Below, in pieces: positions 40-26,110 of a DNA stretch of 64,000 bases; the stretch's first letter is position 1, and each line of letters starts with the position of its first letter. Source of the stretch: Trichoplax adhaerens (taxonomy: Eukaryota; Animalia; Placozoa). Both the position numbers and the translations under genes were made by a program. The notes beneath the pieces are model-generated. The model searched no databases and was not told the origin of the DNA. It worked only from the letters and a program-made list of their open reading frames with translations. The stretch covers positions 186,001 to 250,000 of the forward strand of contig NW_002060948.1 in assembly GCF_000150275.1 (NCBI RefSeq). Direction: 5' to 3'.

Positions 40-545
40 AATGTTACTAGGAAAAGTTAATTTCGGAACAATGATCTAGATTATCTTATTTTTCATAGTG
101 GTAAATTCCTATGCTTCCATTTAAGAGTTACAGAAGGATTACATATTAACATATATAGTATATATATCGTTCATATATTTGCAAATTTCACTAGCTATAT
201 TTAGAACAATGATCTAGGCTATAGTAATTCCATAGTAGTAAATTTTTACGCTTCCACTTTAAGAGTAACAGAAGGATTACTTGTTAACATACACATTGTA
301 CAAGTAAGCATGCATGCAAACTACACTAGCTATATCTAAGGTAATGATCTAGGCTATATTATTTCACATAATAAACTCTTACACATACATATAAAGAATT
401 ACGAAACGGTTACATGTTGGAATTTAAATAATTATACGCGAACTTCACTAGCTATATTTTGGGCTATGATCTAGGCTATGCTGTTTTACATAGTAAATTC
501 TTACACATCCATGTTAAGAGTTTCAGAACAATTTCATATAAATAG
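40..545. repeat. Degenerate intronic tandem repeat, about 4 copies of a ~120-140 bp unit
   Basis: The core ATGATCTAG(A/G)(T/C)TAT...TAAA(T/C)T...TAAGA(G/A)T..C.GAA recurs near 71, 209, 345 and 466. Confidence 0.75.
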
Positions 546-783
546 TATACACTGTTTACCGTACTCATCTAATTTTACCTTGCAATTATAATTACTTATT
601 CTTACAATACTGTGTATATCAGTTACTACAGATATGAACGTTACTATTATCAAGGAGCTAATATTTAAAATCCCCTATTTAAAATATATATATGCGATTA
701 TTGTGAGATATTCTTGGCATTTATGATTATAAAATTTTATTACATTAATTCTATGTTAATGCTTTCGCTCTTATAATCACAAG

Positions 784-3700
784 GTTGTTGGAGTGTTGTG
801 AGTTATTCTTTCGTTAATGAACTTCAAGTCTTCCCTTTTTCCATCAATTCTACTACTGGTAGTATTACTACTACCATGCCATTATCAAGTATATCCAACA
901 CATTCTATCAAGTCAATGCTACCGCTCAAGATTGTACAAATTTAACAGATATTGCCTTAGTGAACATTTCTATTGTCAATACCAATGATTATCCACCTGT
1001 TTTTAATTCCAGTCTCTATCGGCAACTCGTTACAAATACTCTTCCCATAGGATCATCTGTTATACAAGTCATGGCTACAGATAAAGACTTAAATCAGTTT
1101 GGAAAAGTATCTTATTCTATCTTGAATCAGACTAATTTATTTGCTATTCACTCAGCCACTGGTATAATATCCACGGCATCGAGCTTACGATTGATCGTTG
1201 AAAATATCACTCTTACTATTTTAGCACAAGATGGTGGAAGTCCACCCTTCAATACAACTGCTTTAGTCGATCTGGATATATATAATCCATGTCAAGATGT
1301 TTCTTTGTGGATTTTGCCGCCTTATAATACAACATTAGATCCATCTGTTAGTTCTGTTGGTTCGTTAGTAATAGCCATTAACGGCTCTGTTCAAGATCCA
1401 AGACAAAATCAGGCGGTAGACGAGATTATTATGTTCTATCAGATAATGGCTGGTAATAATGATGGTCTTTTTGAGATCAACGGGCAAACCGGTATCGTTC
1501 GATTGGCTAAAGATTTACAGCAATCTGATTTTGGTAAAACTAGAACTTTAACTATCTCGCTTTCCAATAATGGCAGTTGTTCTGTACCTATTACTACGAG
1601 CGATGTTAGTATTAATATTAATTATGAGATTACTACGTCCAAAAACTTTGCTTCATCAGTTCAGCTAGCATTTTCATCGCCTGAAACATCAATCTTGGAC
1701 TCCACAGTTAGCAGTGTGAAACATTCTTCCTTCAACATTCTATCCCCAGAATTATCCCTTCAATTTACTCCCACTTCCATTTCATTCGATATTGCTCTTG
1801 CATCATCGACTACACTTCAAGAATTACTTTCTTCAACACCAATTTTTTACTCCTCAGGCAATAGCATGATATATTCTTCCGATGATAGCTTATTATCAGA
1901 AACATCTTTTCAAGTTAGTTCTACATCGATAGCATCTTCCACACTCGAAATAGAAGCAATACCTTCAAGTCAAAAAATATCTTCGCTGCCATTAGCAAGC
2001 AATGCTTTAGAATCGAACTTACTTTCATCAGATCAAGACCTGGTCAGTTCTTTTAGCAAAGCAATATCATCATCATTTATTGCCAATATAGTATCATCTG
2101 TTAGCTCAAACGAATTGAACGATGTGTCTTTATCGGTTGAGATATCTTCAAAAAATCTAGAAGCTGATGAAAGTGGAACATTTGCCCCTGCTTCGGTGAT
2201 AGACGATAGCAGTCTATCTTTACAAGAACTTTCATCATCATTGCCAACACTTGGTTCAAGTTCATTAAGGCTATCATTGGAGATCTCTACGCTCCAGTCA
2301 GAAATCAAATATTCTATTTCAAGTTCGCTCTTACAGCTTGTGAGCGTAACGGTTTATAATTCATTGCAACCTGACATCCCACAAAGTGAATCTATTAATA
2401 TGAATAGCTCTACTGATGAACTTAATCTTTCCATGCTAAAGACTTCAGAATACCATCCATTGAGTGATGTGCAATCAGATTTATTTGCTAGTGAGATTAC
2501 TCACTCAGTCAAGCCTGAAAATGTCTATAATATAAGCAAAAGCAGTCAAATATTTCAAGAATCTACTCAATTACTTGATATATCAGCTTCGGCAGTGGTG
2601 GGAGAAGATACTAGTGGTATAAGTGATTTAAAGCTATCCAGGATTATATCGTCATCGCTAGACTTTTCGACCTTCAAGCCAGAAAATAAATCCTCTTTTG
2701 CAGATCAAGTTATACAGCCAGTGAGTACAAGTGCTTATAATTTATTACAATCTGAATATTTGCAAAGTGGACCTAACATCGTCAGCTCAAGTAATGAGCT
2801 CGATCTATCTATAATACAATATTCGGAAAGCTTTCAATTAAATTCTCGCTCGCAATCTGATCTATTTGTTAGCGATAATACGTCTTCAGTAGTGACTAGC
2901 TATTTTTATAGTATAAGTAATATTAGTACAACAGTTGAAGAATCTAGTCAACAACTTGATGTGTCAGCGTCGACTGCGGTGGGAGAAAGTATTGGTAGTA
3001 CAAGCGATTTAGATATATCTAGTAAAATATCGTCGTCGTCAGTCTTCTCGGTCTTTACATCTCAAATCGAATCTTCTACAGATCAAATTATACAGCCAGT
3101 AAATAAAACTGTTTATAATCCTACACAATCTAGTATTACAAGCTCAATCGGCGAGCTCGATCAATCTGTACTAAATTCAGAATATATACTGTTAAGCGAT
3201 ATTCTATCTTATCCATTGACTAGTAATATTGCTATCGATATCACATCTTCAATAGCGATTGATAATCTCTCTAGTATAAGCAATAGTAGCCAACTAGTTG
3301 AAGAATCTAGTCAACAACTTGATGTATCAGCGTCGACTGCGGTGGGAGAAAGTATTGGTAGTACAAGCGATTTAGATATATCTAGTAAAATATCGTCGTC
3401 GCCGGTCTTCTCTGTCTTTACATCTCAAATCGAATCTTCTACAGATCAAATTATACAGCCAGTAAATACAACTGATTATAATCCTACACAATCTAGTATT
3501 ACAAGCTTAATCGGCGAACTTGATCAATCTGTAGTTAAAGAATCTAGTCAACAACTTGATGTATTAGCGTCGACTGCGGTGGGAGAAAGTATTGGTAGTA
3601 CAAGCGATTTAGATATATCTAATAAAATATCGTCGTCATCAGTCTTCTCGGTCTTTACATCTCAAATCGAATCTTCTACAGATCAAATTATACAGCCAGT

Positions 3701-6700
3701 AAATACAACTGATTATAATCCTACACAATCTAGTATTACAAGCTCAATCGGCGAGCTCGATCAATCTGTACTAAATTCAGAATATATACCGTTAAGCGAT
3801 ATTCTATCTTATCCATTGACTAGTAATATTGCTATCGATATCACATCTTCAATAGCGATTGATAATCTCTCTAGTATAAGCAATAGTAGCCAACTAGTTG
3901 AAGAATCTAGTCAACAACTTGATGTGTCAGCGTCGACTGCGATGGGAGAAAGTATTGGTAGTACAAGCGATTTAGATATATCTAGTAAAATATCGTCGTC
4001 ATCGTCGGTCTTCTCGACATTTATTACTGAAATTGAATCTTCTATAGATCAAATTATACAGCCAGTAAATACAACTGATTATAATCCTACACAATCTAGT
4101 ATTACAAGCTTAATCGGCGAACTCGATCAATCTGTACTAAATTCAGAATATATACTGTTAAGCGATATTCTATCTTATCCATTGACTAGTAATATTGCTA
4201 TCGATATCACATCTTCAATAGCGATTGATAATCTCTCTAGTATAAGCAATAGTAGCCAACTAGTTGAAGAATCTAGTCAACAACTTGATGTATCAGCGTC
4301 GACTGCGATGGGAGAAAGTATTGGTAGTACAAGCGATTTAGATATATCTATTAAAATATCGTCGTCGTCGGTCTTCTCTGTCTTTACATCTCAAATCGAA
4401 TCTTCTACAGATCAAGTTATACCATCAATGAGTACACATACTAATAATTTATTACAATCTAATAGTTTTCAAGGAGGATCCAACATCATTAGCTTAACTG
4501 ATGATTTATCTATACAAAATTCAGGAAATTTTCTGTTTGATTCACTTACTATCGACAGAACGTATTCAATATTGATCGATAATTCCTACGATATCAGTAA
4601 TAGTAGTCAAATACTTAAAGAATCGAGTCATTCACTTGATATATCAGCTTCAACAGTGGTAATTGAAAGTATTGGTGGCACAAGTGATTTAGATGTCGCT
4701 ATTAACAATTCATCACCGTCAGAAATCTCGACTTTCAAGCCCCAAATCCATTCTTCTGCGATAGATCAAGTTATATTGCCAGTGAGTACAACTATTTATA
4801 GTTTATTGCAATCTAACAGTTTACAAGGTGGATCCAATATCGTTAGCTCACATTACGAGCTCAATCCATCCATGCTCGTAAGTTTAGAAAATGTTCCATT
4901 AAGTGATACTCAATCTGATTTACTTGTTAGTGATATCACATTTCCATTAGTAACTAACAATTCCTACAGTACAAGTAGAATTAATAGTAGTCAAGTATTT
5001 CAAGAATCTAGCCAAATATTTGACAGATCGACTTCGACAGTAGTAGGAGAAAAAAATAATGGTAGTTCAAGTGATTTAAATGTGGCTGTTTATAATTCAT
5101 CATCGTTAGACATCTCAACATTCAAGCCACAAATCAAATCATCTACTGCCTATCAAATCACTCTACCAGTAGCCACTACAACAACGATCATAACTAATTA
5201 TAATTCATTACAATCTGACAGATCGCAACATGAGTCTAGCATCGTTAGCATAACTCAAGACCTTCATCCATCGACATTACCTAACTACTCTCAACTAAGC
5301 GATACTCAAACTAATTTGTATTATAACTCATTACAATCTGACAGACCGCAAACTGAATTTAACGTCGTTAACATTACTGAAGACATCCATTCATCGACAC
5401 TACCTAACAACTTTCAACTAAGCGATACTCAAACTAATTTGTATTACAATTCATTACAATCTGATAGATCACAAAGTGAATCGAACATCGTTAGCATAAC
5501 TGAAGACCTTCATTCATCAACATTGCCTAGTTTAAATTACTTTCAAGTAAGCAATACTCAAACTGATTTGTATTATAATTCATTACAAACTGAGAAATCA
5601 CAAAGTGAATCTAACACCATTAGCACTGCTGCAGACCACTATCCATCAATGTTACCTAATTCAGACTACTTTCAACTAGTTGATACTCAAACTGATTCGT
5701 ATGTTAGTAACATGGAGTATTCATTTAAGACTAGCCATTTATACAGTATAAGTAAGAGCAATCAAATACTTCAAGAATCTAGTCAATCATTTGGCAGTTC
5801 GATGACGATAGTACTGGGAGAAAGTATTGGTAGAACAAGTGATTTAAGTAGGGCCATCTACAAATCATCATCGCCGGAGGTCTCGACTTTCAAGCAACAA
5901 ATCAAATCTTCTACTATGGATCAGTTTATTTCACTAGTGACCATAACACAAACGGTTAAAGCTACTTACAAAACACTACAGTCTGATATTTTACAAAGTA
6001 CATTTGATATTATTAGCTCCACTGATGAGCTAAATCCATCAATATCGCCAAGTTCAGGCAACTATCAATTACTCGTAAGTGATGCTCAATCTAATTTATT
6101 TTCCATTGATATCCAGCATTCCTTAGTGACTAATAGCTTCTATAGTAAAAGTGATAGTATTCAAACATTTAGAGAATCTAGGCCATCATTTAACGTATCG
6201 ACTTCATCAGTGATGGAAGTAAGCACTGGTACTACAAGTGATTCTGATTTAGCTACTAGCAATTCATTATCGTCAGAGATCTCGACTTCAAAGCCACAAA
6301 TCAAATCTTCTACTACAGATCAAATCATCCTGCCAGCGACCACAACTACTTATAGTGTTATGCAGTTGAATAGTTTACAAGGTGGATCTAACATTATTAG
6401 CTCAGCTGATGAACTTTACGCATCTATATTGCTAAATTCAGACAACTTCCAAGTTAGCGATATTCAATCTGATTTGCAAGTTGGTCGTATCACACACTCA
6501 CTATTAACTAGCTATTTCCATAGTACAAACAAGAATAATCAAATAGTTCAAGAATCTAGTCAATCATTTAACATATCAGCTTCATCAGTGATGGAAGAAA
6601 GTATTGGTAGTACAAGCGATTTAGATATAGCTACTAATAAATCATCATCGTCAGACATCTCGACTTCCAAGCCACAGATCAAATCTTCTTCTACAGATCA

Positions 6701-9700
6701 AATCATCCTGCCTGCGACAACAACTACGTATAATGTTATGCAATCTAATAGTCTACGAGATGAATTTAACATTATTAGCTCAGCTGATGAGTTCAACCAA
6801 TCTATATTGCAAAATTCGGAAAACTTTCAATTAAGCGATATTCAATCTAATTTACAAGTTAGTAGCATCACACACTCACTATTGACTAGCCATTTTTATA
6901 GTACAAACAAGGATAATCAAATAGTTCAAGAATCTCGTCAATCTTTGAGCATAACAGCTTCATCAGTGATGGGAGAAAATGTCGGTAGTACAAGTGGTTT
7001 AGCCATTAACAACTCATCATCGTCAGGGATCTCGACTTTCAAGTCATACTTAAAATCTTCTAATATAGATCAAGATACTCCGCCAGCAACCATGACTACT
7101 TATAATTCATTACAATCTGACATCGTTAACTCAACTGATAACCTTGATCTGTCGAGATTAGCTGATTCAAGTAACTTTCATTTAAGCGATACTCTATCTA
7201 GGTTGTATGTCAGTAGCATAGCACAATCATCTGTGATCAGAAATTCCGATAGGATAGGTAATAGTGATCAAATATTTAGAGAGTCTATTCAATCATTCGA
7301 CTTCTTGACTACGTCAGTGGTGATAGAGAATATTGGTTGGACAAGTAATTTAGGTGTAGTCATGAATAACTCATCGCCAAAAGTATCAACTTTCAAGCAA
7401 ACATTCAAATCCTTTACTACAGATCAAGTCCTTCCACCAGCAATCACCACAATTTATAATTCATGGCAATCTGATATCATTAAGTCAACTGACAGTCTTG
7501 GTTCATTGATACTGACTAATTCAAATAACTTTCAATTGAGCGATACTCAATCTAGTTTGTACCTTAGTAACATGGTGCAATCAGTGACTAGCGATTTCCA
7601 TAGCATAAGGAATAGTATCCACATATTTACAGAATCTGGTCAATCATTTGGCATATCGGCTTCATCAGTGATGGGAGAAAGTATTGGTAGCTCAACTGAT
7701 TTAGATATAGCTGTTAATAATTCATCACCGTCAGGGATCTCGACTTTCAAACAACACATGAAATCTTCGATAGATCAAGTCATTCCATCGACGGTCACGG
7801 CTGCTTATAACTTATTGCAATCTAACATCGTAAATTCAATAATTGACAATCTTGATCCATTATTTAATTCAAACAATTTTCAATTAAGCAGTACTCAATC
7901 TAGCTTTTATGTTAATAACATGGTGCAATCATCCGTGACTAGCAATTTTTACAGTATAAGTAATAATGATCTAATTTCTAGTGAATCTATTTATTCACTG
8001 GACATATCGACTTCACCAGTGATGAGAAAAAGTATTGTTAGAACAAGTAATTTAGATATCACCAATTACAATTCATCATCGCCAGAAATCTCGACTTTTA
8101 AGCCACATATAAAATCTTCTACAGATCAAGTCATTCCACTTGCAACCACAACTATTTACAATGCTAGGCAAACTAATAGTTTACAAGGTGGACTCAACAT
8201 CATTAGTTCAGTTGATGAGTCTAATCCATCCATTCTATCAAATTCAAAACACTTTCAATCAAGCTATACTCAATCTGATTTGTATATTAGTAATGTCGTG
8301 CATTCGCCAGTAACTAATAATTTATACAGTATCAATAGCAGTAAATCAATATTTAGAGAATCCATTCTGTCATTTGACATATCGACTTCATCAGTGATGA
8401 GAGAAAATATCGGTAGTACAAGCGATTTAACCATTAACAACTCGTCATCGTCTGAAATCTCTACTTCCAAGGTACTCATAAAATCTTCTGCTACAGATCA
8501 AATCATCTCGACAGCGACAACAACTACTTATAACGTAGCACAATCTGATAATTTACAAAATGGATCTAACATTGTTAGCTCAATTTATGAGCTCAATCCA
8601 TCTATTTCACCAAATTCAGACAATATTCAATTAAGCGATACTCTATCTTATTTACAGGTTAGTAGTATCACATACTCGCTAACAACTAGCAATTTCTATA
8701 GTGCAAGTAAAAACAATCCAATAGTTCAAGAATCTAGTAAATCATTTGTGATAATGACTTCATCAGTGATATGAGAGAATATCGGTAGTACAAGCGATTT
8801 AGCTATTAACAACCCGTCATCGTCTGAAATCTTTACTTCCAAGGTACACATAAAATCTTCTACTATAGATCAAACCATCTCATCATCAATCAAAACTACG
8901 TATAACACAGTGCTATCTGACAATTCACAAGGTGAATTTAGTATTATTAGTTCAATTTATGAGTTGAATCCATCTATATTACTACATTCAGACAATATTC
9001 AATTAAGCGATGCTCAATCTAATTTGTAAATTAGTACTGTTACGTATTCGTTAGCGACTAGCAATTTCTTTAGTACAAACAAGAATAATTCAGCAGTTCA
9101 AGAGTCTGATTAATCATTTGATATTCGGTTCATCATTGATCGGAGAAAATATCGGTATTACAAGCAATTTAACCACTAAAAACTCATCATTAAGGATTTC
9201 AACTTTCAAGACATAAATTAAATCTTCTAGAACAGATCAAATTTTCCCTTCAGCGATTATAATTGCTTATAATACAATAAAATCCGATAATTTACAAAGT
9301 AGATCTAGCTTCAGTAGTTTATCTGTTAAGCTCAATCCATCTATATTGCCAAATTCAGACAGCTTTCAATTAAGCGATTCTCAATCTGACTCACAAGATA
9401 GTGATATTGTGCACACATTAACGACTAGCGATTTCTATAGTATAAGCAGAATCAAATAATTCAAGAATCTAGTTAATAATTTGACATATTGACTTCATCA
9501 GTGATAGGAGAAAATACTGGTAGTACAAACGATTTAGCCATTAATATCTCATCACCGTTAGAGATCTCGACTATTAAGCTACATATAAAATCTTCTACTA
9601 CAGATCAATCAATTCATCTCGCCAGCAACTACAAACACTTATAGCATAGTACAATCTGACAATTTACAAAATGGACCCAATATCATTAGGTCGACCGCCA

Positions 9701-12700
9701 AGCTCAACCCATCTACTTGTATTAGAGAACCAAATCTATTTCTTTCATCTAGCATTGAATTCTTTACAACTTGACTTGTTAGCAAGTTTGACGGATAAAT
9801 ATGCTATTGCAATACTCTCTAGCCAATTACTGTCAGTTTCTACTTCTGTAATCCTTCGCGAATTTATCGACGGTATGACTACTTATGACATCACTCTTAG
9901 CGATAGAATTGTAGCATCAGCAGTTTATCACTCAAATATATTTATAGCACAACATTCACTATAGAAAATCAAAATTTTAATCCCAGATCTTCCTTTAGCT
10001 TGCAATACAAGCTATTTCTGTTCGGGCTGTTTCGGTTTCCTATACTTCAGTAATAGCTAGCGATATTTTAGTATCAGACAAACAGTATTTATCGATAGGA
10101 TCATCGCATTTAACTACGTCTAGCGGCATAGCTAAGTCATTATCATTTATAAATCAATCTAGTCTTCAATTAACTATGATTTAAGATAAAAATTCTATCT
10201 AAAACACTAATTCTTCAACTCTATTTCAGTCTATTCCATCCGGGGTGACTTCATCCATCGATATTGCCGCGACTCAAGCGGATACAACAGCACCCTATAT
10301 ATCTTCGCTGGATGCAAGTACAAATAGCAACATGGGGCAAAAATCAACTGGCTATTCGATGATATCTCCTCAATTAGAATCCTCTACAGATTTATACACA
10401 CATATAGGGGAAACAAGCGATCAGCTTTCTACAACATACTTCATCCCTACGGAAGGAATAGGATATAGCTTAAGCGATGGATTTACATTTGTAACCGTAG
10501 CTAGTAGCCAAAATCGTAACCCAATTAGCATATCGAATACTAATAGTGAGCAAAATTCAATCGAATATCCAACGATATCTCTTCTATCACAATCATCTGC
10601 GAATTTACAAACATTTACTGGAAAGATAAGCAATCAGCTTTCTACAACATACTCCAGCTCTGCAGAAGGATTAGGATATAGCTTAAGCGATGGATTTACA
10701 TTTGTAACCGTAGCTAGTAGCCAAAATCGTAACCCAATTAGCATATCGAATACTAATAGTGAGCAAAATTCAATCGAATATCCAACGATATCTCTTCTAT
10801 CACAATCATCTGCGAATTTACAAACATTTACTGGAAAGACAAGCAATCAGCTTTCTACAACATACTCCAGCTCTGCAGAAGGATTAGGATATAGCTTAAG
10901 CGATGGATTTACATTTGTAACCGTGGCTAGTAGCCAAAATCGTAACCCAATTAGCAAATCGAATACTAATAGTGAGCAAAATTCAATCGAATATCCAACG
11001 ATATCTCTTCTATCACAATCATCTGCGAATTTACAAACATTTACTGGAAAGACAAGCAATCAGCTTTCTACAACATACTCCAGCTCTGCAGAAGGATTAG
11101 GATATAGCTTAAGCGATGGATTTACATTTGTAACCGTAGCTAGTAGCCAAAATCGTAACCCAATTAGCATATCGAATACTAATAGTGAGCAAAATTCAAT
11201 CGAATATCCAACTATATCTCTTCTATCACAATCATCTGCGAATTTACAAACATTTACTGGAAAGACAAGCAATCAGCTTTCTACAACATACTCCAGCTCT
11301 GCAGAAGGATTAGGATATAGCTTAAGCGATGGATTTACATTTGTAACCGTAGCTAGTAGCCAAAATCGTAACCCAATTAGCATATCGAATACTAATAGTG
11401 AGCAAAATTCAATCGAATATCCAACGATATCTCTTCTATCACAATCATCTGCGAATTTACAAACATTTACTGGAAAGACAAGCAATCAGCTTTCTACAAC
11501 ATACTCCAGCTCTGCAGAAGGATTAGGATATAGCTTAAGCGATGGATTTACATTTGTAACCGTAGCTAGTAGCCAAAATCGTAACCCAATTAGCATATCG
11601 AATACTAATAGTGAGCAAAATTCAATCGAATATCCAACTATATCTCTTCTATCACAATCATCTGCGAATTTACAAACATTTACTGGAAAGACAAGCAATC
11701 AGCTTTCTACAACATACTCCAGCTCTGCAGAAGGATTAGGATATAGCTCAAGCGAGGAAACTGTATTCCTAACAGTAACCAGTAGCCAAAACCGTTATTC
11801 AACTAGCGCGTTATTCAGTATAATGGATTCGCATTCAGTAAACTCATTTTTGATACCTGAGCAAACTGGCTCAACAGCAATACAGGAGATATTAACATCT
11901 ACAAAGAATGCACTACTAAATCCAACCGATAGCGGCAGCATCTATACTTCTATACTAAGTGTAAAATCAATTCCAACGTTATCTTCTACCTCAAGTCCCT
12001 CTATATCTGTTCATACTTTAAATGATCAATTCACAATTGATTATGCTAGCTCGATTGAGGCTACTTCTGCTACTCCCAACTACTTTCATGATTCATCATC
12101 AGCCTTTAACAATAGCCAAACGACTATTTATCCGACAAATTCAACATTAGTCACACCATCTGTTATTAATACTACTTCAATAGCAATCACGATTGAATTA
12201 CCAGCTACCTTTAACGCTAATAATATTCAGCTTATAGTCATCCTATGCTCAGGTACTTCCAATAATCCATCGCAAAATCAACCATGTCAAGGCACGAATA
12301 TTTCGACGACTGTGCAATTTCAAATCTTACCTAATCAAGTTATACAAATTAATAATTTAAATCCAAACACGGTTTACAGCATTCAAGTACGCTCTGGCCA
12401 ACATGTCACAGCATGGCTAGTTCGTAGAACATTAGGCTCTGGTAAGTTTAAATATAGGATGATAATTTTATAAGTATCAATTTCGCTCAATATACGCAAT
12501 ATACACTAAACAATGTCCTGTGTTTTGTGACATAATCTAGCCCCAGCTGGAATTTCATTACCCACTTGGCGAGCTGATTTCAGCAGTCAATGTATCCAAT
12601 TTAACTGGACTCAGCCGCGTGAATCTGGGGACGATACGGTTTCTTATAGATTGAATATTAATGGTCTAGAAACCTCACTTTTGACTCAAAAATATTATCA

Positions 12701-15700
12701 ATATTGCAGCCAGTTCGGAGACAAAATTATTTATTATTTAACGGCTCTAAACAGGTATAGTAACAAATAGTAAGATGAAGTGGATGGTATGTTCGAATAT
12801 TTAAAATGTTGAAGTATTCTAGTTTTCATTTAAACGGCTCTATAAGGATAAGAAGGTTAATGCTTAAGTTGAAATTTTTTCTCCATTTTTCTTACTGATT
12901 TCTATTCACAGATTTGGTAATACTGATAGTTCCATCGCCATAATTTATATTCCAGGTCAGTATTATCGTACATGAACGATTAGTAAACAGCATCAATTAT
13001 ATTAGCATACGTCCTTATTTATAATGGTATAATGGATAAAAAGTATCATAATGAGTAAAAGTTTTTGTTTCGTAAGCATAAAGAAAGATTATAAAGCGTG
13101 TATAGATTGAATTTACAGCATTGTAATAAATTCTTGCTTGGTCATAATATACGGTACCCACAGAAAAGTTGCATGAATAATGATTACGATTCTACAATAA
13201 ATTTTAGCAAAGTACAAAACTGTAATAACATTCGTCGTAATTTTCTTACCGTAAAATGCGTAGAACTAAACCAATAAATACATTACTATATAGTTTATGT
13301 AGATAGTAGTAAGGTATTAACAACTTTAATAATTAATTTGTAAAAACATTTCCAATAATAATCCTGATAGTAGATTAAGGATACGTATTGTTTATTATAA
13401 TACGTATAATTTCTAACAGTATCATTCCATAAGCATAGAGGACTAGACGGCGATAATTTTATCTTGATAAACATAATCTATATTGGACCTTTTGACACAA
13501 CATTAACTGTCTTATTAATATCTCGATATAGCTGTAACTAATGCCTCTAGGGTATAATCCAACTTTAACTTAGTTTTTATCGTTATAAATCTATTCATTC
13601 CAATAGGTCTTAGTATAATAACATTTAGTAGTAATCCTACATCAACGTTTCTATAAAGGAATTTACATCACTAATCTTACAGATTTCAGTAAGGCTATAA
13701 AACATTATTATCAAACCTTTATAGGGTTTAAAATCAAAGATATCTCATTTTTTCTCTCTCTTTAGTATAAGTAAATCGAATTATTTTTGATTCCTTCTTA
13801 TTGTCCATAATATGCATACAGGCTCATTCACTGAATACACATAAACAAAAGTCTCCCTTATTTCCCTGACATAAGTTATCATAACCGTCTTTAATATAAC
13901 ATTATTTATTTAGTTTCTACGGCAATTAATTATTTAAAACTAATCAATGTAAATCACTTTGTAAGTAATAATCATAACAAAGATTGTATATCAGCCATGA
14001 ATAATATTGTAAAACTCTCATTATGGTTTCGATCCTTGTCTTGACACTTCTTCGTAAAAGTGCTAATATTTACTGCGAATCTATGGTTACGGTAGTTTAT
14101 CCTTTCTAGCGTATATTAACCACCTGAATAGGATCATGAATTTTAAGATACAATTTCGTAACAGCGTTTACTATTGACAATATGTTCTATCAATATGTTC
14201 CAAACTCATTACGGCCAACAATATCTAGACAAATTTTCAATATTTATCTTAATTTACAAGTGCAATACGTCGTGGATCATTTACAATAATCTAATCACCC
14301 ATATCGAGCAGTGCATTAATTTATACATGTGCCAATATTGAGTAGGCATGGAAAAACTTTACTTGAAAACATTCGTTTTTAGTTACCATTTAAACTTCGC
14401 CCAAGTGTGCCATGTACTAATTTGTTAATTATTAACTGTAAATACACAACATATATAACTTGTTAGTTATCAAGTATACGTTACCTAAACTCAGGGCTCT
14501 GATCGATTTTATATAAAAGGTTAAGTATACAATAGAGCATTTTTTGTACGTAGATATATCATTAATACTTTTGAAAAGGCTTGTACGCTTGCTTCTAGAC
14601 TTTATTAATATCACTGACGGAATATTTGCTTTGACATTAAGCGCTACGAATAGTACGCTAAAATCAATTTAAAATACGCATATTAGCAATTTGCCATACA
14701 CACCACGGTTATATCACTAGGATACATAAAAACATTTTCAAATGTTTGTTTTTGGCATTGGAATGCCATTGATGGTACTGATTCATTATAACCATTCATT
14801 CAACCTCGATCGAATTTTTCGTTAACAACTTTTTGCTATAGTTACAATAATACAAAAGTTCTGGAAATACGCTAGAGAACAATCAACATTTTGGTTCTAT
14901 TCATGTATCACCGTTTCACAAATCATTGCCTAGCCATAATAGTAAAAGCGTTCCATCCGTTCATTTTTCTACCCAATTAGAGCTCTAATCTGTCGCTCAG
15001 TATATATTTATAATCATCGTTATCAATCGTGGATTACGGCCATACCAGGCTTCAAGTACGGTATAAACTATAGAGCTATAAACGCTTTCTTATTCATAGA
15101 CTAATATAGAAAGCAATGATTGTCACGTTTTCAAGTTATCTTGTTGTCATTAATTCCATAAAAGTTTAATTTTTATATACATCATACATGTTATAATTAT
15201 GTATTTCGTTATAATATAAACAAACATAACACCATTTCCGCTATCTTATCATGTCCTATTAATTTAATATTGAACTAACACTTCTATGACGTTCACTACG
15301 GTGCTTTTTGAATACTTCTATTTTTATCCTCTTATTGTAATAATTTGAATCTTTTATGAGTGTAGAGAATCAACTAATTCTTGAAAATTGTGTTTATCTC
15401 GCATTTATTAACCTTCACCTTTTCTCATATCGTGTGAAATAGTATAGTAATTTAGGAAGATAACGTCACAAGTTAAATGATGGCAATCGTGTTGATGCAA
15501 AAATGTATTTACAACATTTAAATTTATCAACAACAAAATTGGGTGTAGCAAAATGAAATTAAATTTGATTTAAATGACGACATAATATGAATGATGACAG
15601 AATGTGAACTCTATGAATCGATTTTATACATTGACTCAGTTAATAAATTGATCAATGATGATGTATCACGAGATTGATTGAATTAATCCTATGTTCTATT

Positions 15701-17143
15701 TAAATTGATTAGCTTCAGCGTCCTTCCAACCCAGGCTAATTTCATCCAATACTAGCTGTGGGTATATAGGTTGGCCAACTCTTCAACAACCCAGTGATAC
15801 TAGCAATCAAGGCGTGTACTACCAATTAATAGATCCTACTAGGGGTCAAGTCCGTTATAACGGCACCATGACAACTACAGTGCTATGCATCGACAACAGA
15901 CGTAATGCCGCTATTTTCAACTTGCAATTAATTGCTATACTGACGTAAGTTGCATCATGAATAATTCATAACTACATTCTAGTAAGAATGCAACAATATT
16001 ATAACAATGCTATTTTGAATAGTGAATAAACTACGTAATGATAGAACAAGAATATGCTTATAATGATATTTCGTTCATGAATAATCGACCTAAGAATTGT
16101 GTAAAATCAACAATACGTTAATCTGATCGTCGATGAAAGCATAACAATGAATTAATAGTTGAATTTTTAATTATGATATGTTATCGATTGGCCACAGTAA
16201 CGGAGTATTTATAAGCAACACGACAAGCTTTCAGCTAGCAGAAACAGTTGCAGCGCTTGCTGTGTTGACAACGCTTGAAATTGCTGGAATTGTATGTGGT
16301 ATTCTTTTACTCCTTGTCATGGCTGTATGTGCAGTATACGTTTATCGTAAGATCCACTTAAATCATCAAATCAACCAACCACTTTCTACACGTAAACTTT
16401 ATGTTGATGTAAGTATCATTAGTAAGATAACACAATTAATTTATTATTTGATGCAATGATAATATTGGGTAGATAATGTAGTGGTGTATGATAGCCAAAG
16501 CTATTCATCTAGTGGATAAGTTAATATCGTATTATTGAATTTATTTCGGGTAGGATATTCCATTGGTTGAGGCACAAGAAACGGCTATTAATTTCTCACT
16601 ATTTTCCCATCGAGCTCGGAGTAACAATGTATCATTAGAGCCGATTAAAGAAAGTGGAGAAGATATCGGTCCGACTGAATATGGTAGTGATGATAACGAT
16701 ATTGATGAAAATAGTGATTCTTTTGATACACCTCCAGAAGTTGTGGAAGAAATTATTGCTCCAGTCTCTAGTAATCGAAATAGTCAACCACCCAGTCGTT
16801 CAGCATCTATAGGATCCAAGTTATCAAAAAAAAGTGTAAATTTCAATGTAAGGCTATATTGTAATATTAATCCTATTATGGATCATCTTTCAATTTTATC
16901 TTAACTTAATATCGTTTCATTTTCCTATAGGAGGAAATAAGAGGTAACGTTACAGTCACTACTGTAGAAATGAATGGTGAACTTTACGAAATCCATGAAG
17001 GAGAATTTTCCTTTGATCCAAATTGTTCAAATGGAGATGATAACATCGTTGGAAGGCCAAGAAGTAGCTCCATCATCATTGATGATATGCCTCCGACTTT
17101 GTTGCAATCTTCTAAATCGGCAACAGAAACATCTCCAACTTAA
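784..17143 (+). CDS. Giant cadherin-related mucin-like single-pass membrane protein, 5'-partial. Inferred exons 784-8657, 10230-12441, 12541-12754, 12912-12955, 15713-15944, 16198-16408, 16554-16847, 16931-17143
   Basis: Cadherin motifs NTNDYPPVF, VMATDKD, GKVSYSI, LFAIHSATGII, AQDGGSPP, GLFEINGQTGIV; long Ser/Thr repeats; FN3-like segments (NNLNPNTVYSIQV, IQFNWTQP..VSYRL, YIGWP..VYYQL); TM IAGIVCGILLLLVMAVCAVYVY followed by RK. All introns are GT-AG with compatible phases. The first exon opens in phase 1 after AG at 782-783, so upstream exons lie outside the window. Confidence 0.8.
2300..9720 (+). repeat. Coding tandem array of ~120-aa (~360 nt) Ser/Thr-rich units. Near-identical copies at 2941-4410; ~41-43-aa sub-repeats at ~5200-5700; decayed copies beyond 8774
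   Basis: AATCTAGTCAACAACTTGAT starts at 2941, 3304, 3541, 3904 and 4270 (spacings 363, 237, 363, 366). The motifs ESSQ.FDIS.S.V.GE.IGSTSDL and STFKP.IKSS.DQ recur throughout. Confidence 0.9.
10421..11760 (+). repeat. Six near-identical 213-bp (71-aa) coding tandem repeats plus a partial seventh
   Basis: The unit NQLSTTYSSSAEGLGYSLSDGFTFVTVASSQNRNPISISNTNSEQNSIEYPTISLLSQSSANLQTFTGKTS has a period of exactly 213 nt. Confidence 0.97.
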
Positions 17144-17760
17144 TCACCGACGGCCTCACCAATACTTGTGTCGCCAGTATCGTCATCAACATCGTCGTCG
17201 CCATCCAACTCACCACCATCATCTCCAGTCACCAAGCCCTTACCAGAGTTTCAACCATGATCGGCAACATCTGCATCGTCATCCATTAATGAAGATTTAT
17301 CCAAGTCACAAATTTCATCAGAGAAGATATCTTCATCACAATCACCAACTTCGGTATTGGAAGGTAAAGATTTACCTGAGTCTCCATCTCAATTATAAAA
17401 GATATCGTCAATGCAATCATCATCACTTACCCAAGAAGATATATCATTATCTTTGCCAAGGCCGACATCAAATCTTCCAGAGCCACCTTCTTCTTCAGTG
17501 GAAGCGATATTACCATCTCCACTACCATCACCGACTATGCGATCAATACCACAGCCACCCTCTCCATCAGCATCATTGCAACATTGCCATTATCAGAGTC
17601 ACCTTCATCAAATAATAAGACTGTAGAAACTACTTCGGAATCACCTACTGAATCGACAGATTCTGCATTATCGTCTGCGCCTTTGTTACAACATCAATCT
17701 GCATCCGAATAATCTTCTCTTCCTGCTTTGCCGTTACTATCTTCAGAGATATACATGACT

Positions 17761-21600: not shown

Positions 21601-23927
21601 TATCCATAGGAAGATAAATTCACTCGGAGCTAAATAATGATGCAAAATTATTAGAAATTTCCTAATCCCTCATAGCCAATGTAATATACCGCTACGGGGT
21701 TAGATTACAGTGAACTCTCTCTATATACATTGTATTGGTTGTTATACAGTAGATAACTTGCTATCGAGGTTATAGAATTATAAAACTAATTCATATTTTA
21801 GTAAGGACAAATAAATTAGTTAGATATCTAATTCATTAGGGGCCGCAAAGGTCAAACCGTTTTCTGATCGTGATTAATCTCGTGATTAATCTCTTATTTC
21901 ACTTGTTTATTAATTTATACGATGTAGTAGCATAGATTAAAAAAAATCATTAATGCATTAATAGGGTGATTGATCTGCTATCATTAAGCTAATTAACAAT
22001 TGTTGTTTATTTGGCGACTTATTTTCATCTGATTGTGATCGACTACAGTAGAATGGCCTAATATTTGCAAATTTTATAATTGATTTATGATGAATAAAAT
22101 ATTAAACGAAGATTTTAATAAAAGTGATAAATCTATTAGCAATCAACATTTTCTAGGCATCTATTAACCATATTATCGTCAGTGATAGTGTTTATTGTAT
22201 TCATCAATCATATTGTAGTCAAATATCGGGATCATGGATTGTTGACCATAGTGAATAGACTATCGTCATTAAATACAACTAAAAGCTGATATCAAACAAA
22301 TTAATTAAAATATGTAAAGGGAGGGACTAGAGGTTATTTGGACTGCTTACAATATAAAATGCTGTAACCTTCTGCTGGGTTAAGATGGAAGTCAAGTGGG
22401 CATTGCCATGGTTGTTGCCACAAGAGAACTGGTTAGATCTTCATCATGACATTAAACAGTAGTTATAGTTGGTCTGGCTATATCAATAGGAAGTGAGAGA
22501 AGCTTTACCGACCTTCCTAACCAACAATGCACATGGTCTGGTAAAGAAAGGCATTCTGTGGTTTATTGATAACATCCTGCACTATCGTGAAAAAGAAAAT
22601 AAGCAATAACTTATGATTTATTTAAATTAATAGTTATCTTTGGTCTAGGAATACTACTACTATTCAGTCCACTTCTATTCATCATTAGAAATTACCTAGA
22701 TATTATACCGACTGACTCGTTTTTTGGGCCGATACCCTAACGGATGATTGGGACTATATATTACAATCTACTCGATCGTAACCGAATTGCAATCTATGCT
22801 CATAATAGACGTACTAAACGTGTTGGAATTGATTTCCAATACCTCAAGCTTGTAGCTACGACAAGGTTGCGTTAGTTAGTTAGTTAGTTAAATTGTATAA
22901 AAATATTAATCTTATAAATTCTAGTCGATGAATGTCTTAGAATATATCAACCGGTAAAGTGTTTAGATTAGTTGTGAACAGCCAAAACTAAATCTAAAAA
23001 TATTATAGTATCTTTAGCGATAAAACGTTAGTAGGGAAATTGCAAAATTTTGAAAAAGCTACTCTTGTTCCTGCTTTGAGCCTTAGGGGATTGATAGTAG
23101 TCGTTTCTTGCAGTACCATATTACTGCTATTATTACTAATCCTGATATTCCTAGCGTGCAAACGAAGATTGAATATTATTTAAAGTCAATATCATACTCA
23201 AGCAGAAAATTAACTTAATTTATTATAGCAATCTTTATTTATCACTCTTATAGCCGTAAATGCAGCTAGCTAAATAAACTTCTTAGTAACTAATGGTATT
23301 TCTTACTATTAAAATCTACAGTATATCTGTATCACCATAGCTAATTCATTTTGTTAAAGTTATTATGTTTACCTAGTCCACTCCAGATAAACTCATTAAT
23401 GCAATTTTATCTCTTAATTTTTATAGCCTTTAGGTACGTCCGATAATTTAAATATGCAAAATTTAGATTTGCAAGTATATAGAACCGAATTTGATGATGT
23501 TCCTACTCTGGAAACTAACGGATTAACTAAACACGATGCCGAACATCATGATGGATACGAGGGAGGGCTACAATTAATGGCATTCCTGCCAAAAAGTTCA
23601 CAATTGAGGTAATCGTTTGCAAGACAGTAAATATTATTTGATATGAATGCTGGAACTGTTACATTAGCCTTAATCTTGAAGCTCAGTTCCAAATTGTAAT
23701 TATCTAGTCGAAAGCTGTAATAAATACTCAGAGTCTCTATTGTATTTTTGTAGTATATGTAAGTCTAACAGAGCTGTGAAATATGAGACTATTAACATAT
23801 TGTATATCTGATCTGATTTATTTAGGGTGAGCTTCGAGATACGTCGTACGATACGTTGGGTGTACTAATTGATGGAGTTCCATACACTAGAGTTGAAGGA
23901 TATTTTGAATTTTCTGAAGAATTATAG
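18670..23927 (+). pseudogene. Decayed tandem paralog of the cadherin-mucin-FN3-TM gene. Clearest exons 22649-22865 (FN3), 23018-23183 (TM), 23467-23608 and 23826-23927 (cytoplasmic)
   Basis: Exon 22649-22865 reads ..FSPLLF..GTIYYNLLD..YLKLVATT against ..FQPRLI..GVYYQLID..NLQLIAILT in the intact gene, with the same 1/2 phases and an in-frame TAA at 22738. The next phase-2 exon gives TM GLIVVVSCSTILLLLLLILIFLAC-KRR. The last exon VLIDGVPYTRVEGYFEF matches VEMNGELYEIHEGEFSF. Weaker upstream traces at ~18690 (AVDCSRNLT), ~20080 (NKQIFDQRFY) and ~21445 (SNWPYTVFS). The 5' boundary is uncertain. Confidence 0.65.
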
Positions 23928-26110
23928 TCCTTCAAGTAATAAAAAATTACGTAGTTACGGTAAATACGAGCTGACTCCGTTCGATATTGGCTAAAATTTC
24001 AGTTCAATATAATTATTTATTAATTATAACTAAAAAATATACTTAAAACCTTTATAGATAATTATCCTTTGTACATATCTCACATGTAAACATAGAATTT
24101 ATCATTGTCACTTATTACATACTTATAATACTTTCTATACAGTAAGAAAAAGAATTTTAATTTCACCTACCCAATCTTAATTGTAACTTAGCAAATTAGA
24201 TATGAAATCATCTATGCATTTCAATTTTTTTAAAATATACGTATATATGACAAGATTAAAGCGACTGATACTATTATCTTATTAGTCAACCAACATGAAA
24301 TTATGATTGTAAAAGTTTGTAAACTAAATGAAATTAGATATTGTTTTTTAATACTTACCGTAGCTACTGTATTCGCAATTTACTGTGGTTAAAGTACGTA
24401 AATAAGTTTTCGATGCGATACGATTAAATAAAGATTGTGATGTTTTAAATTTACTCAGTTATTGCTGCGTAAAGTCGATGATCTATCATTGTCCTGTTAT
24501 TATTTATGATGTTAATATCCATCTTCAATGGATAAAATATATTTGAGGTATATTGTACTTTGCAGCATGAGTATGATTGGGATTAAGATTTTTCGTTTAG
24601 ATTCATTTTTAATCACTTAGTATCATATGAATTTTAAATACATAACTTAAATTTGTCAGTAAGAGTAAGACCTATGACGAAAGTTGGCTACATTAATTCT
24701 AATCTTTAGAACTACTCATATTACTGATTATATGAACTATAGATTATGAATCAGCAGTCTTATAGATCGAATACAGTGTACATCGAGAGTCGTTGAATAC
24801 TACCGTATGCGTACAACCATATATTATAGTAATAAATGATACATCGTATCGAAGATCGGGCCAGAAATTTCAAGGGGGAGAAACTGTTAGCAAGATTAAA
24901 TTTAGGCTTTAGCTAATACGATCACATTCAAGACTTTCATAATGTCGAAATTAATGTGAACTATGAATTGATATCATGAATCAATTCATTGCAATATTGC
25001 ATAGTAGTTTCAGCTCTTTTAGCGAGTCTATATCCAATTTACAATTGATGAAAAACTGTATAATCTAATTGTTTAGTGCCACCATAATTAGTAATAAACT
25101 AGCCGTATAGTTAACAATTAATTAAGCGTAGATTAAAGAGTTGGTCTATTAATATCGTAACTATTATAAATATTCGTATTTTAAATATAATTGAACGCCT
25201 CTAGGATTGAGAAGTTTATATAAAAAGTAATAGCAAAGATTCAAATCACTACACTACAATTATATAAGAGCATTTCTGAAGTTTAACATTTGAAACCTTA
25301 TGGGATCAAATTAATAAAAATAAGTAATCTACTATAGTTACTTCAGCTAGAATTATAGCGAGGAGAGTTTTCGTTAGATAAAGGGTTTTAGAATAGTAAT
25401 TTACTTTCATCATGCAAGAACCTAGCTAAAATGTGAAATAGTAAGTAGTTTAATTAAAATTTGTGTGCTGTAGCAGTGTATGTCTTAAGAAGCTAGAATC
25501 TAGCATTTACGAGTATTTCAAATCAGAGCTAATAAGATATGATTAGGCCAAAAATTTTCGTTTATTCTTAAACGAACTACTAATAATTATTATAATGATT
25601 AAAAATATACAGAAGCCGTAAGATTTTGGAAATCAACGTCACCTAAATTTACCATTATTTCATATTTTAAAACAATGATTTACAGTAAGCTATGAGTAGT
25701 TGGTATTGAGTAGGGTTGTATATAAAGTACAACGGTAATAATATGTTGACAATCAATATGCATGAAAATATGTTAACAGTTACTTATCGGCTATCCAGTT
25801 ACATAACTGTTTATAATAATCGAAATAAGAACAATAGCTGGAACAGAATAATACATAGAGCATGCATGGAAACATCCGTTCGACAGGAATGATTACTAAC
25901 TTTGGTAAATGTTAGTTAATATATCATAACAATTGAATACACCAGACAAACGAGCACTTTCAATAATTAAAATCAATTACGAAATATCGAGGGAGCTACT
26001 AGATTTGGCGGAAGTATTCTACTAGACAATTTCGTGATTACTACTATTTACCATACACTTGTCCTTAGTGGATCGAATTAGTAGTGTAAACTTTCATTTG
26101 CAGTTCCAAT

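What the first reader, a model, noticed from the sequence alone, without database searches (positions are those of the whole stretch)
784..17143. Giant cadherin-mucin-FN3 single-pass receptor with an architecture I cannot match to a named family
Seen: the separate ORFs at 798, 10245, 16178 and 16563, plus small unlisted exons, splice into one protein of >3700 aa. Domain order is cadherin repeats, ~3000 aa of Ser/Thr repeats of two unrelated unit types, three FN3-like modules, TM and a ~200-aa tail. Known: vertebrate CDHR5 (mu-protocadherin) combines cadherin repeats with a short mucin region and links microvilli, but has no FN3 modules and no stalk of this size. Inference: a long-range adhesion or glycocalyx tether that holds cadherin domains far from the membrane, possibly for microvilli, cilia, mucus or substrate adhesion.
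Basis: partly seen in the sequence, partly recalled or inferred. Interest (0 to 1): 0.85.

Follow-up and report, generated by a model that had tools for sequence, protein, structure and literature searches.

The report
Giant placozoan cadherin on serine-rich stalk
Four separately annotated Trichoplax gene models are very probably one gene for a membrane protein of about 4,400 residues: a laminin-like and cadherin head on a stalk of about 3,000 serine-rich residues, an architecture seen so far only in placozoans.

Summary
The window is Trichoplax adhaerens scaffold C1409:186001-250000.

- **Splice evidence.** RNA-run contigs splice 8657|10230 (GT..AG, phase 0/0) across 1,572 bases of decayed repeat units. 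A second in-frame donor, 4781, uses the same acceptor.
- **C-terminal exons.** These exons (10230-17143) match a public 5'-partial Trichoplax sp. H2 model that starts exactly at 10230. Their order, splice sites and a 44-nt mini-exon are conserved in a second placozoan.

- The gene starts about 4.5 kb upstream of the window. That part encodes a signal peptide, a Laminin_N domain, a LamG-like domain, EC1 and half of EC2. The total is about 4,388 aa.
- There are four cadherin repeats.
- The stalk is Ser-rich, Pro-poor, Cys-free and acidic. It gives no confident fold. That makes it mucin-like in role at best, not a classic Pro/Thr/Ser (PTS) mucin.
- Only two of the three membrane-proximal modules show a weak, in-register FN3 signal.
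- The 190-aa tail is cut short by a stop codon relative to the other placozoan.

No relatives of the C-terminal half were found outside placozoans, and no named family fits. The tether or adhesion function is inference.

The parts
784..8657 (+). Giant exon. It encodes the C-terminal half of EC2, then EC3, EC4, a non-repeat Ser-rich linker and stalk 1. The acceptor AG is at 782-783 and the donor is CAG|GTTAGT at 8657|8658.
   Evidence: The H2 model P0122 uses the same acceptor and donor. In RNA run X6, contig record 10 ends exactly at 8657.
784..1690 (+). Cadherin repeats: EC2 C-terminal half, EC3 and a degenerate EC4. The EC2-EC3 linker has a canonical NDxxPxF-type motif. DxD motifs are present.
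   Evidence: Pfam Cadherin E 6.8e-26, 3 stretches; motif listing.
2232..8657 (+). Stalk 1: 20 tandem copies (16 near full length) of a unit of about 125 aa. Composition is S 24%, T 8.5%, P 2.9%, no Cys, net charge -155.
   Evidence: jackhmmer self-search; composition; alignment A1; AlphaFold2 with a 16-unit alignment gives pLDDT 43 and pTM 0.10.
4781..4782 (+). Internal alternative donor (CCA|GTGAGT, phase 0). It is spliced to the acceptor at 10230, which removes 5,448 nt: 1,292 stalk codons plus the intron.
   Evidence: Run X14 has a 318-nt contig, 210 + 108 nt, depth 15.5, GT..AG, with no shared letters at the joint. Sequence context.
8658..10229 (+). Intron of 1,572 nt, GT..AG, phase 0/0. 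Its first ~1 kb is a decayed continuation of the 372-bp stalk repeat, with 3 in-frame stops and 3 frameshifts.
   Evidence: Frames; TRF array 8370-9675; RNA joint in run X6 and no coverage of 8828-10220 in run X14. The same state is present in H2.
10230..12441 (+). Exon with stalk 2 (71-aa unit x 6.3 at 10413-11755), a unique Ser/Thr-rich stretch and FN3-like module 1 (12171-12437).
   Evidence: P0123 starts exactly at 10230. hhalign against 20 Trichoplax FN3 domains gives P 1e-4, in register.
12541..12754 (+). Exon with FN3-like module 2, strands A to F.
   Evidence: Boundaries. The only PDB hit of its profile is an FN3 domain, 1x4x, E 0.005. hhalign P 0.005, in register. It is 71% identical in the other placozoan.
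12912..12955 (+). Mini-exon of 44 nt that completes module 2. It restores a Y-x-L-x-A-x-N-x-x-G type F-strand/FG-loop motif across the junction.
   Evidence: The same mini-exon with AG/GT sites is present in ortholog contig L019.
15713..15944 (+). Exon with membrane-proximal module 3, about 77 aa, fold unknown.
   Evidence: boundaries; no FN3 signal (hhalign P 0.09); no H1/H2 substitutions.
16198..16408 (+). Exon with the juxtamembrane stretch, the single TM helix and the basic stop-transfer residues.
   Evidence: The model has a helix at 914-959. Ortholog P0127 is 71% identical.
16554..16847 (+). Cytoplasmic tail exon 1.
   Evidence: 60% identity to ortholog P0125.
16931..17143 (+). Cytoplasmic tail exon 2. 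It carries the conserved V-E-M-N-G-x-x-Y-E-I-H-E-G-E-F-S-F motif and the TAA stop at 17141.
17144..17712 (+). Former distal tail, now behind the stop. It is a Ser/Pro-rich sequence homologous to the open tail ORF of another placozoan, here with stops at 17141, 17258 and 17396 and a frameshift near 17590. It is probably 3' UTR.

Best explanation
One Trichoplax adhaerens gene spans about C1409:181,460-203,140. That is from about 4.5 kb upstream of the window to window position 17143. It encodes a type I membrane protein of about 4,388 aa.

Domain order, N to C:
1. signal peptide;
2. a Laminin_N (galactose-binding-like) domain, interrupted or preceded by a LamG/ConA-like domain;
3. four cadherin repeats;
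4. about 2,970 aa of acidic, Cys-free, Ser-rich, probably disordered and probably O-glycosylated stalk, in two unrelated repeat types;
5. two weakly FN3-like modules and a third beta-rich module;
6. one TM helix;
7. a 190-aa tail.

Shown here: the splice that links the cadherin/stalk exon to the C-terminal exons; a second in-frame splice that shortens the stalk by 1,292 aa; the cadherin and Laminin_N domains; and the conserved C-terminal exon order in another placozoan.

Inferred: the stalk holds a LamNT/LamG/cadherin binding head far from the membrane, so the protein acts as a long-reach tether (to substrate, matrix, glycocalyx or another cell). Stalk length would be adjustable by donor choice. 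The tail would couple it to the cell through a conserved motif that has no known partner.
For: - **Splice, run X6.** Declared RNA. The joint is equivalent to 8657|10230 and skips 1,572 nt, GT..AG. Contigs break exactly at 8657 and at 10230.
- **Splice, run X14.** From an independent study. Joint 4781|10230, in frame, on a 318-nt contig, with no coverage of the intron.
- **Frame and splice sites.** The join is phase 0/0 with good splice consensus.
- **ORF2 cannot stand alone.** It has no start codon with a signal peptide, yet it precedes an ectodomain and a TM segment.
- **H2 model.** The public 'partial' model P0123 begins exactly at the acceptor and runs to 17143. My exon coordinates reproduce it with 8 aa differences.
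- **EC2.** It is split across the intron that ends at 783. This ties the upstream exons to the first ORF.
- **Pfam.** Cadherin x4 (E 5e-42) and Laminin_N (E 3.9e-13). The LamG_3 exon scores E 3e-4, and 19 of the 30 nearest Atlas clusters are LamG_3.
- **Second placozoan.** The Ser-rich ORF, module 1, module 2 and the mini-exon lie on one contig in that order. The TM and tail exons lie on another.
- **Constraint.** C-terminal exons show 2 substitutions in 1,770 bp between H1 and H2, against 29 in 3,450 bp of intron (Fisher p 5e-4). pN/pS is 0.42 for the first ORF and 0.53 for ORF2.
Against: - No single read or contig spans the whole gene. The joins downstream of 12441 rest on a gene model, splice-site and frame logic and comparative conservation, not on reads laid here.
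- The X6 joint has only a 27-nt anchor on its short side. X6 also holds the unspliced intron at about half the exon depth, so a TM-less product ending at the TGA at 8772 may coexist.
- Both public annotations split the locus.
- The FN3 calls are weak, and the single-sequence AlphaFold2 model is uninformative (pLDDT 36).
- The decayed repeat units and the truncated tail hint at relaxed constraint.
- Glycosylation, extension and binding of the protein are untested.
Confidence: 0.75

Rival explanations
1. There are two products. One is a secreted LamNT-cadherin-stalk protein that ends in the repeat-derived region, either by intron retention to the TGA at 8772 or by the H2 model's exon 9055-9214. 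The other is a separate membrane protein from 10230 onward. The observed joints would be minor forms.
For: - The H2 annotation has two models, P0122 ending at 9214 and P0123.
- Run X6 has contigs that run through the donor and across the whole intron at depth 7-9.5, against 16-25 in the exons.
- Run X14 has a contig at 8566-8759 that crosses the donor unspliced.
Against: - No joint 8657|9055 was seen in any of the four runs.
- P0123 is flagged partial and has no start codon or signal peptide.
- Two different donors in two studies use the 10230 acceptor, both in frame.
- In X14 the joined contig is the deepest at the locus (15.5 against 2-6.5), although contig depth is a poor measure.
Confidence: 0.12
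2. The locus is a decaying gene in the Trichoplax H1/H2 lineage. It is still transcribed and spliced but no longer makes a functional receptor.
For: - Repeat units with 3 stops and 3 frameshifts sit at 8658-9700.
- The distal tail is interrupted by 3 stops and a frameshift relative to the open ORF of another placozoan.
- pN/pS of 0.42-0.53 is fairly relaxed.
Against: - Open frames of 2,620 and 737 codons persist in 35% GC DNA in both H1 and H2.
- The defects lie where splicing or the stop codon removes them from the product.
- The C-terminal exons are depleted of substitutions (p 5e-4).
- Nonsynonymous changes are fewer than neutral expectation (32 of 54 changes, although nonsynonymous sites are 78% of all sites).
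- The locus is expressed in several RNA runs.
Confidence: 0.06
3. The same gene, but the Ser-rich region is not an extended glycosylated spacer. It would be a cohesive or adhesive material (a sericin-like or beta-rich glue, or a matrix component), possibly shed from the membrane, that sticks the animal to surfaces.
For: - The composition (24% Ser, 27% I/L/V/F, 3% Pro, acidic, no Cys) is unlike PTS mucins.
- The low-confidence model of the 71-aa array is all beta-strand.
- The same composition, but not the sequence, is kept in the other placozoan.
Against: - No confident fold for either unit.
- The conserved TM segment and tail argue for a membrane-anchored receptor.
- No cleavage module such as SEA was found.
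Confidence: 0.07

Closest known systems
CDHR5 (mu-protocadherin, mucin-like protocadherin) of vertebrates
   Same: It is a type I membrane protein with four cadherin repeats followed by a Ser/Thr-rich repeat region, a TM segment and a short tail. The idea of cadherin domains displayed on a glycosylated stalk is shared.
   Different: - The stalk here is about 3,000 aa rather than a few hundred, and it is Pro-poor.
- This protein has a Laminin_N/LamG-like head and membrane-proximal beta modules.
- No PDZ-binding C-terminus is evident.
- There is no sequence relation beyond generic cadherin repeats: the best database hits are FAT, Dachsous and CDH23-like proteins at 25-39% identity.
Usherin (USH2A)
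   Same: It has a LamG-like plus Laminin_N head at the N-terminus of a very long single-pass ectodomain, with FN3-type modules next to the membrane. This description of usherin is from my own knowledge, not tested here.
   Different: - No laminin-EGF repeats and no long FN3 array were detected.
- This protein has cadherin repeats and a disordered stalk instead.
- Trichoplax has only four Laminin_N loci, and this one is the most divergent.
Lefftyrin-type cadherins of sponges and choanoflagellates (Nichols et al. 2012, recalled from memory)
   Same: Cadherin repeats are combined with LamG-type and FN3 modules in a single-pass protein of an early-branching lineage.
   Different: - No EGF and no cytoplasmic tyrosine-phosphatase domain were found.
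- Domain order differs.
- Lefftyrins have no Ser-rich stalk.
Membrane-tethered mucins (MUC1, MUC4, MUC16 type)
   Same: They have a huge tandem-repeat Ser/Thr-rich ectodomain on a single TM anchor, and the repeat arrays turn over quickly.
   Different: No SEA, NIDO, AMOP or vWD module was found. Pro is only 3%. This protein carries a folded binding head at the distal end.

Membership tests
Cadherin superfamily | Two or more consecutive extracellular cadherin repeats recognised by the Cadherin profile | tested here: met
   Pfam PF00028: 4 stretches, E 5.4e-42 on P0122; 3 stretches, E 6.8e-26 on window:798-1700.
Cadherin superfamily | Calcium-binding linker motifs between repeats (DxD, DxNDN-type) | tested here: inconclusive
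   DxD is present in EC1-EC3. The EC2-EC3 linker is canonical (N-T-N-D-Y-P-P-V-F). The EC1-EC2 and EC3-EC4 linkers are non-canonical.
Classical cadherins | Cytoplasmic catenin-binding domain (Cadherin_C) | tested here: not met
   No Pfam family at E <= 0.1 in the tail of P0123 or in the tail exons.
CDHR5 / mucin-like protocadherin | Orthology to CDHR5, and a Pro/Thr/Ser-rich mucin repeat | tested here: not met
   The stalk has 2.9-3.0% Pro. The C-terminal half has only placozoan relatives among 1.84 billion representative proteins. The cadherin part hits FAT, Dachsous and CDH23-like proteins, not CDHR5.
Usherin | Laminin_N head | tested here: met
   PF00055, E 3.9e-13, 49.9 bits against a cut-off of 25.9.
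Usherin | Laminin-type EGF repeats and long FN3 arrays | tested here: not met
   Neither family was reported by Pfam on P0122 or P0123.
Fibronectin type III domain (modules 1-3) | Match to the fn3 profile or to the FN3 fold | tested here: inconclusive
   - Pfam fn3 gives E 0.09 and related families 0.02-0.03, all below cut-off.
- Module 2's only PDB hit is an FN3 domain (E 0.005).
- Module 1's only PDB hit is the Tie2 FN3 region (E 2.4).
- hhalign against 20 Trichoplax FN3 domains gives P 1e-4 (module 1), 0.005 (module 2) and 0.09 (module 3), against 0.6 for a stalk-unit control.
- The structure model is too poor to use.
Mucin domain | Dense O-glycosylation of Pro/Thr/Ser tandem repeats | not testable with these tools
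   Only composition (S+T 33-36%, P 3%) and the lack of a predicted fold are available.
Lefftyrin cadherins | Cytoplasmic protein tyrosine phosphatase domain | tested here: not met
   No phosphatase family was found in P0123. The family definition is recalled from memory.

The most novel reading that the evidence does not exclude
Stalk length of a giant adhesion receptor is set by splicing inside its own coding repeats.
- Val-Ser codon pairs (GTN AGT) create phase-0 donor-like sites throughout the giant exon (13 by a simple scan, 12 of them in phase 0).
- At least two of them (4781 and 8657) are spliced in frame to the single acceptor at 10230.
- The intron itself was born from repeat units that decayed after they began to be skipped.

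The result would be a placozoan-specific LamNT/LamG/cadherin head displayed at variable distances from the membrane.
Probability: 0.35. Interest if true: 0.7.

Novelty: new variant of a known kind. Interest (0 to 1): 0.55.

Why it matters
Placozoans are among the simplest animals, and their adhesion toolkit is used to reconstruct early animal cell adhesion. This locus adds a cadherin-superfamily architecture that public annotation hides by splitting it into fragments: TRIADDRAFT_57049, 57050 and 57052, and RDD44919 plus RDD44914 in H2.

- A correct merged model is needed before single-cell atlases, proteomics or cadherin inventories can see the gene.
- The locus is a clean case of in-frame alternative splicing inside a giant repeat exon.
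- It is also a clean case of an intron made of the gene's own decayed coding repeats.

Tried and rejected
- **Word-index search, N-terminal head** (P0122 residues 30-500): no hit at E <= 0.001, not even the query itself. This is uninformative.
- **Word-index search, cadherin region:** swamped by many-repeat FAT and Dachsous proteins.
- **Nematostella 'cadherin-23-like' and a eukprot protein** with F5/8-C or LamG_3: these domains sit in the middle of 36 cadherin repeats, so the architecture differs.
- **The 4,647-aa open frame at C1407 with cadherin hits:** it is an IPT/TIG protein with S+T of 18%, not a paralog.
- **Paralogs of the C-terminal half in the genome:** none at E <= 0.001. tblastn over the rest of the window also found nothing significant.
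- **AlphaFold2 on P0123 without an alignment:** mean pLDDT 36. The model is unusable, so no fold search was run.
- **Literature searches** for the locus tags, accessions, 'Trichoplax + cadherin + laminin N-terminal' and 'mucin-like': no paper describes this gene. Hulpiau and van Roy 2011 is not held.
- **Run X13:** no contigs could be laid on this stretch.
- **Joined model left out.** Exons were searched by reference, and the public H2 proteins by id. The join of the N-terminal part to the C-terminal part was left out; only lengths were added. One local script concatenated the C-terminal exons solely to fix their coordinates against P0123.
Full report
**Identity of the window**

A search of the window's own assembly places it at G000:C1409:186001-250000, in a 105.6-Mb genome of 1,414 contigs. 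Proteins encoded here carry Trichoplax adhaerens accessions. The locus is 99.3% identical and collinear with Trichoplax sp. H2 contig NOWV01000021.

**The observation**

The first, 798-8774, opens with cadherin repeats (Pfam Cadherin, E 6.8e-26). It then runs into a Ser-rich region.

Position 784 is a splice acceptor, not a gene start. The stretch just upstream of the window (L011) holds six further exons:
- a signal peptide followed by a Cys-containing start that weakly matches Laminin_N positions 6-53;
- three exons of a LamG/ConA-like domain (Laminin_G_3, E 3e-4; 19 of the 30 nearest Atlas clusters are Laminin_G_3);
- the rest of Laminin_N (E 4e-10 on the exon, 3.9e-13 on the H2 protein);
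- EC1 and the first half of EC2.

EC2 is split by the intron that ends at 783. This ties the upstream exons to the giant ORF. Pfam counts four cadherin stretches in total. Their calcium-site motifs are only partly canonical.

**The stalk**

- Residues 479-2620 of the first ORF are 20 tandem copies of a unit of about 125 aa (alignment A1).
- The second ORF carries 6.3 copies of a 71-aa unit that are 98% identical.
- The two unit types are unrelated (hhalign P 0.81).
- Composition is S 23-24%, T 8.5-13% and P 3%. Stalk 1 has no Cys and a net charge of -155.
- AlphaFold2 with the 16 units as an alignment gives pLDDT 43 and pTM 0.10, so no fold is predicted.

I read this as a disordered, probably O-glycosylated spacer. 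It is not a classic Pro/Thr/Ser mucin, and glycosylation is untested.

In a second placozoan the equivalent region keeps the same composition (S 24.5%) but shows no detectable internal repeats. It is only 32% identical overall. The arrays therefore turn over quickly.

**The critical link, 8658-10229**

After the stop at 8772 the 372-bp repeat continues for about 1 kb, with three in-frame stops and three frameshifts. These defects are also present in H2, so they are not assembly errors.

A donor CAG|GTTAGT at 8657|8658 and an acceptor TTTCAG| at 10229|10230 are both in phase 0.

Contigs of four public runs were laid on 4450-10410:
- **X6** (declared RNA) has a joint equivalent to 8657|10230 that skips 1,572 nt, GT..AG. 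Separate contigs end exactly at 8657 and start exactly at 10230. The short side of the joint is only 27 nt. X6 also holds the unspliced intron at lower depth.
- **X14** (another study) has no coverage of 8828-10220. A 318-nt contig joins 4781 to 10230 (210 + 108 nt, GT..AG, no shared letters at the joint). This join is in frame and removes 1,292 stalk codons.
- **X7** covers the intron like the exons and may be DNA.
- **X13** gave nothing.

No run supports the H2 model's acceptor near 9055. The cadherin/stalk exon and the second ORF are therefore joined in RNA, by at least two donors.

A scan shows that GTN-AGT (Val-Ser) codon pairs create 13 donor-like hexamers in the giant exon, 12 of them in phase 0. 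Only two are shown to be used.

**The C-terminal exons**

The public H2 protein RDD44914.1 (P0123, 'partial', 1,139 aa) starts exactly at the 10230 acceptor and ends at the TAA at 17141. A local search over AG/GT sites reproduces it with 8 aa differences. The exons are 10230-12441, 12541-12754, 12912-12955, 15713-15944, 16198-16408, 16554-16847 and 16931-17143.

Their support is indirect:
- All splice sites are canonical and the frame is continuous.
- The 44-nt mini-exon completes an FN3-type F-strand/FG-loop motif across the junction.
- Logan contigs from a second placozoan (66-71% aa identity) carry a long open Ser-rich ORF, module 1, an intron, module 2, an intron and the same mini-exon with AG/GT sites, all in that order (L019). 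The TM and tail exons lie on another contig, L018.
- Between H1 and H2 the C-terminal exons have 2 substitutions in 1,770 bp, against 29 in 3,450 bp of intron (p 5e-4).
- Likely RNA runs hold 0.45-0.46 of the sampled words of 8000-17700. This is close to the exonic share of about 0.48.

**FN3 modules**

Pfam does not call fn3. The best values are fn3 E 0.09, Pur_ac_phosph_N 0.02 and Fn3_Dep-1_3rd 0.027.

| Module | Only PDB hit of the two-species profile | hhalign vs 20 Trichoplax FN3 domains (A4) |
|---|---|---|
| 1 | Tie2 FN3 region, E 2.4, not significant | P 1e-4, probability 57%, E-F strands in register |
| 2 | FN3 domain 1x4x, E 0.005 | P 0.005, B-C strands in register |
| 3 | not searched against the PDB | P 0.09 |
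| Stalk-unit control | not searched against the PDB | P 0.6 |

The single-sequence AlphaFold2 model of P0123 is unusable (pLDDT 36). Two modules are plausibly divergent FN3. The third is of unknown fold.

**Tail**

The TM helix is followed by basic residues and 190 aa with no Pfam family.

In the other placozoan the tail ORF runs about 195 aa further through Ser/Pro-rich sequence. In H1 and H2 the homologous DNA follows the TAA at 17141. It carries further stops at 17258 and 17396 and a frameshift near 17590. The Trichoplax tail is therefore truncated. The JGI model TRIADDRAFT_57052 skips these stops with an unsupported intron.

**Relatives and family**

- A full HMMER scan of 1.84 billion representative proteins with P0123 found four proteins. 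All are placozoan fragments or models.
- The genome holds no paralog of the C-terminal half.
- The cadherin part resembles FAT, Dachsous and CDH23-like repeats only generically (25-39% identity).
- No catenin-binding domain, laminin-EGF, SEA or phosphatase domain was found.

The protein is a member of the cadherin superfamily. It belongs to no named subfamily that I could test. It resembles CDHR5 in principle (four cadherin repeats on a Ser/Thr stalk). It resembles usherin in its head (LamG-like plus Laminin_N) and its membrane-proximal FN3-type modules. The comparisons with usherin and with the lefftyrin cadherins rest on my own knowledge.

**Mechanism**

Shown: one spliced gene, an in-frame alternative splice that shortens the stalk, a folded N-terminal head, a long unstructured acidic Ser-rich region, and a conserved TM segment and proximal tail.

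Inferred: the head binds a matrix, glycan or cadherin partner at a distance from the membrane set by the stalk. Donor choice varies that distance. The conserved tail motif links the protein to intracellular partners.

Rivals:
- two separate products;
- a decaying gene;
- an adhesive-material role for the stalk.

**Constraints observed**

The N-terminal and C-terminal parts were never joined; only their lengths were added (3,249 + 1,139 = 4,388).

Noticed in passing
window 17144-17712: The DNA after the stop codon is still recognisably the distal cytoplasmic tail of the ortholog in another placozoan, whose ORF is open to the end. Here it is broken by stops at 17258 and 17396 and a frameshift near 17590. 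JGI model TRIADDRAFT_57052 bridges it with an unsupported intron.
   Followed up: yes
window 22998-23991 (+): Small exons encode a TM segment (22998-23180), an acidic stretch (23427-23609) and a second copy of the tail motif (V-L-I-D-G-V-P-Y-T-R-V-E-G-Y-F-E-F, near 23868). This is a possible small paralog or relic that shares only the TM and tail module with the giant gene.
   Followed up: partly
L013:452-6056 (= about C1409:171,700-177,300, upstream of the window): The gene immediately upstream encodes a 545-aa protein with Glycos_transf_2, Glyco_transf_7C and Ricin_B_lectin. From my own knowledge, this is the architecture of polypeptide GalNAc-transferases, which start mucin-type O-glycosylation. 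It is a notable neighbour for a Ser/Thr-rich stalk gene.
   Followed up: no
window 428-625 and 67-370: A dispersed element of about 190 bp has at least 38 further copies (69-89% identity) across the genome. It sits in the intron upstream of exon 784, next to a 138-bp tandem repeat.
   Followed up: no
window 798-8657: Val-Ser codon pairs (GTN AGT) create 13 donor-like hexamers inside the giant exon, 12 of them in phase 0. Two (4781 and 8657) are seen spliced.
   Followed up: partly
window 55319-56002 (+): This ORF ends in a cystine-knot pattern typical of TGF-beta/BMP ligands, with an RRKR-type cleavage site before the mature part.
   Followed up: no
G000:C1407:111078-125018 (L014-L016): A single open frame of 4,647 aa begins with IPT/TIG-like repeats and contains three cadherin repeats. 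It is another giant single-exon ectodomain gene, unrelated to this one.
   Followed up: partly
L011:5462-9117: The Laminin_N profile matches in two pieces, positions 6-53 in the first exon and positions 51-213 four exons later. The LamG-like domain lies between them. This suggests a LamG-like domain nested in, or inserted near the start of, the Laminin_N domain.
   Followed up: partly
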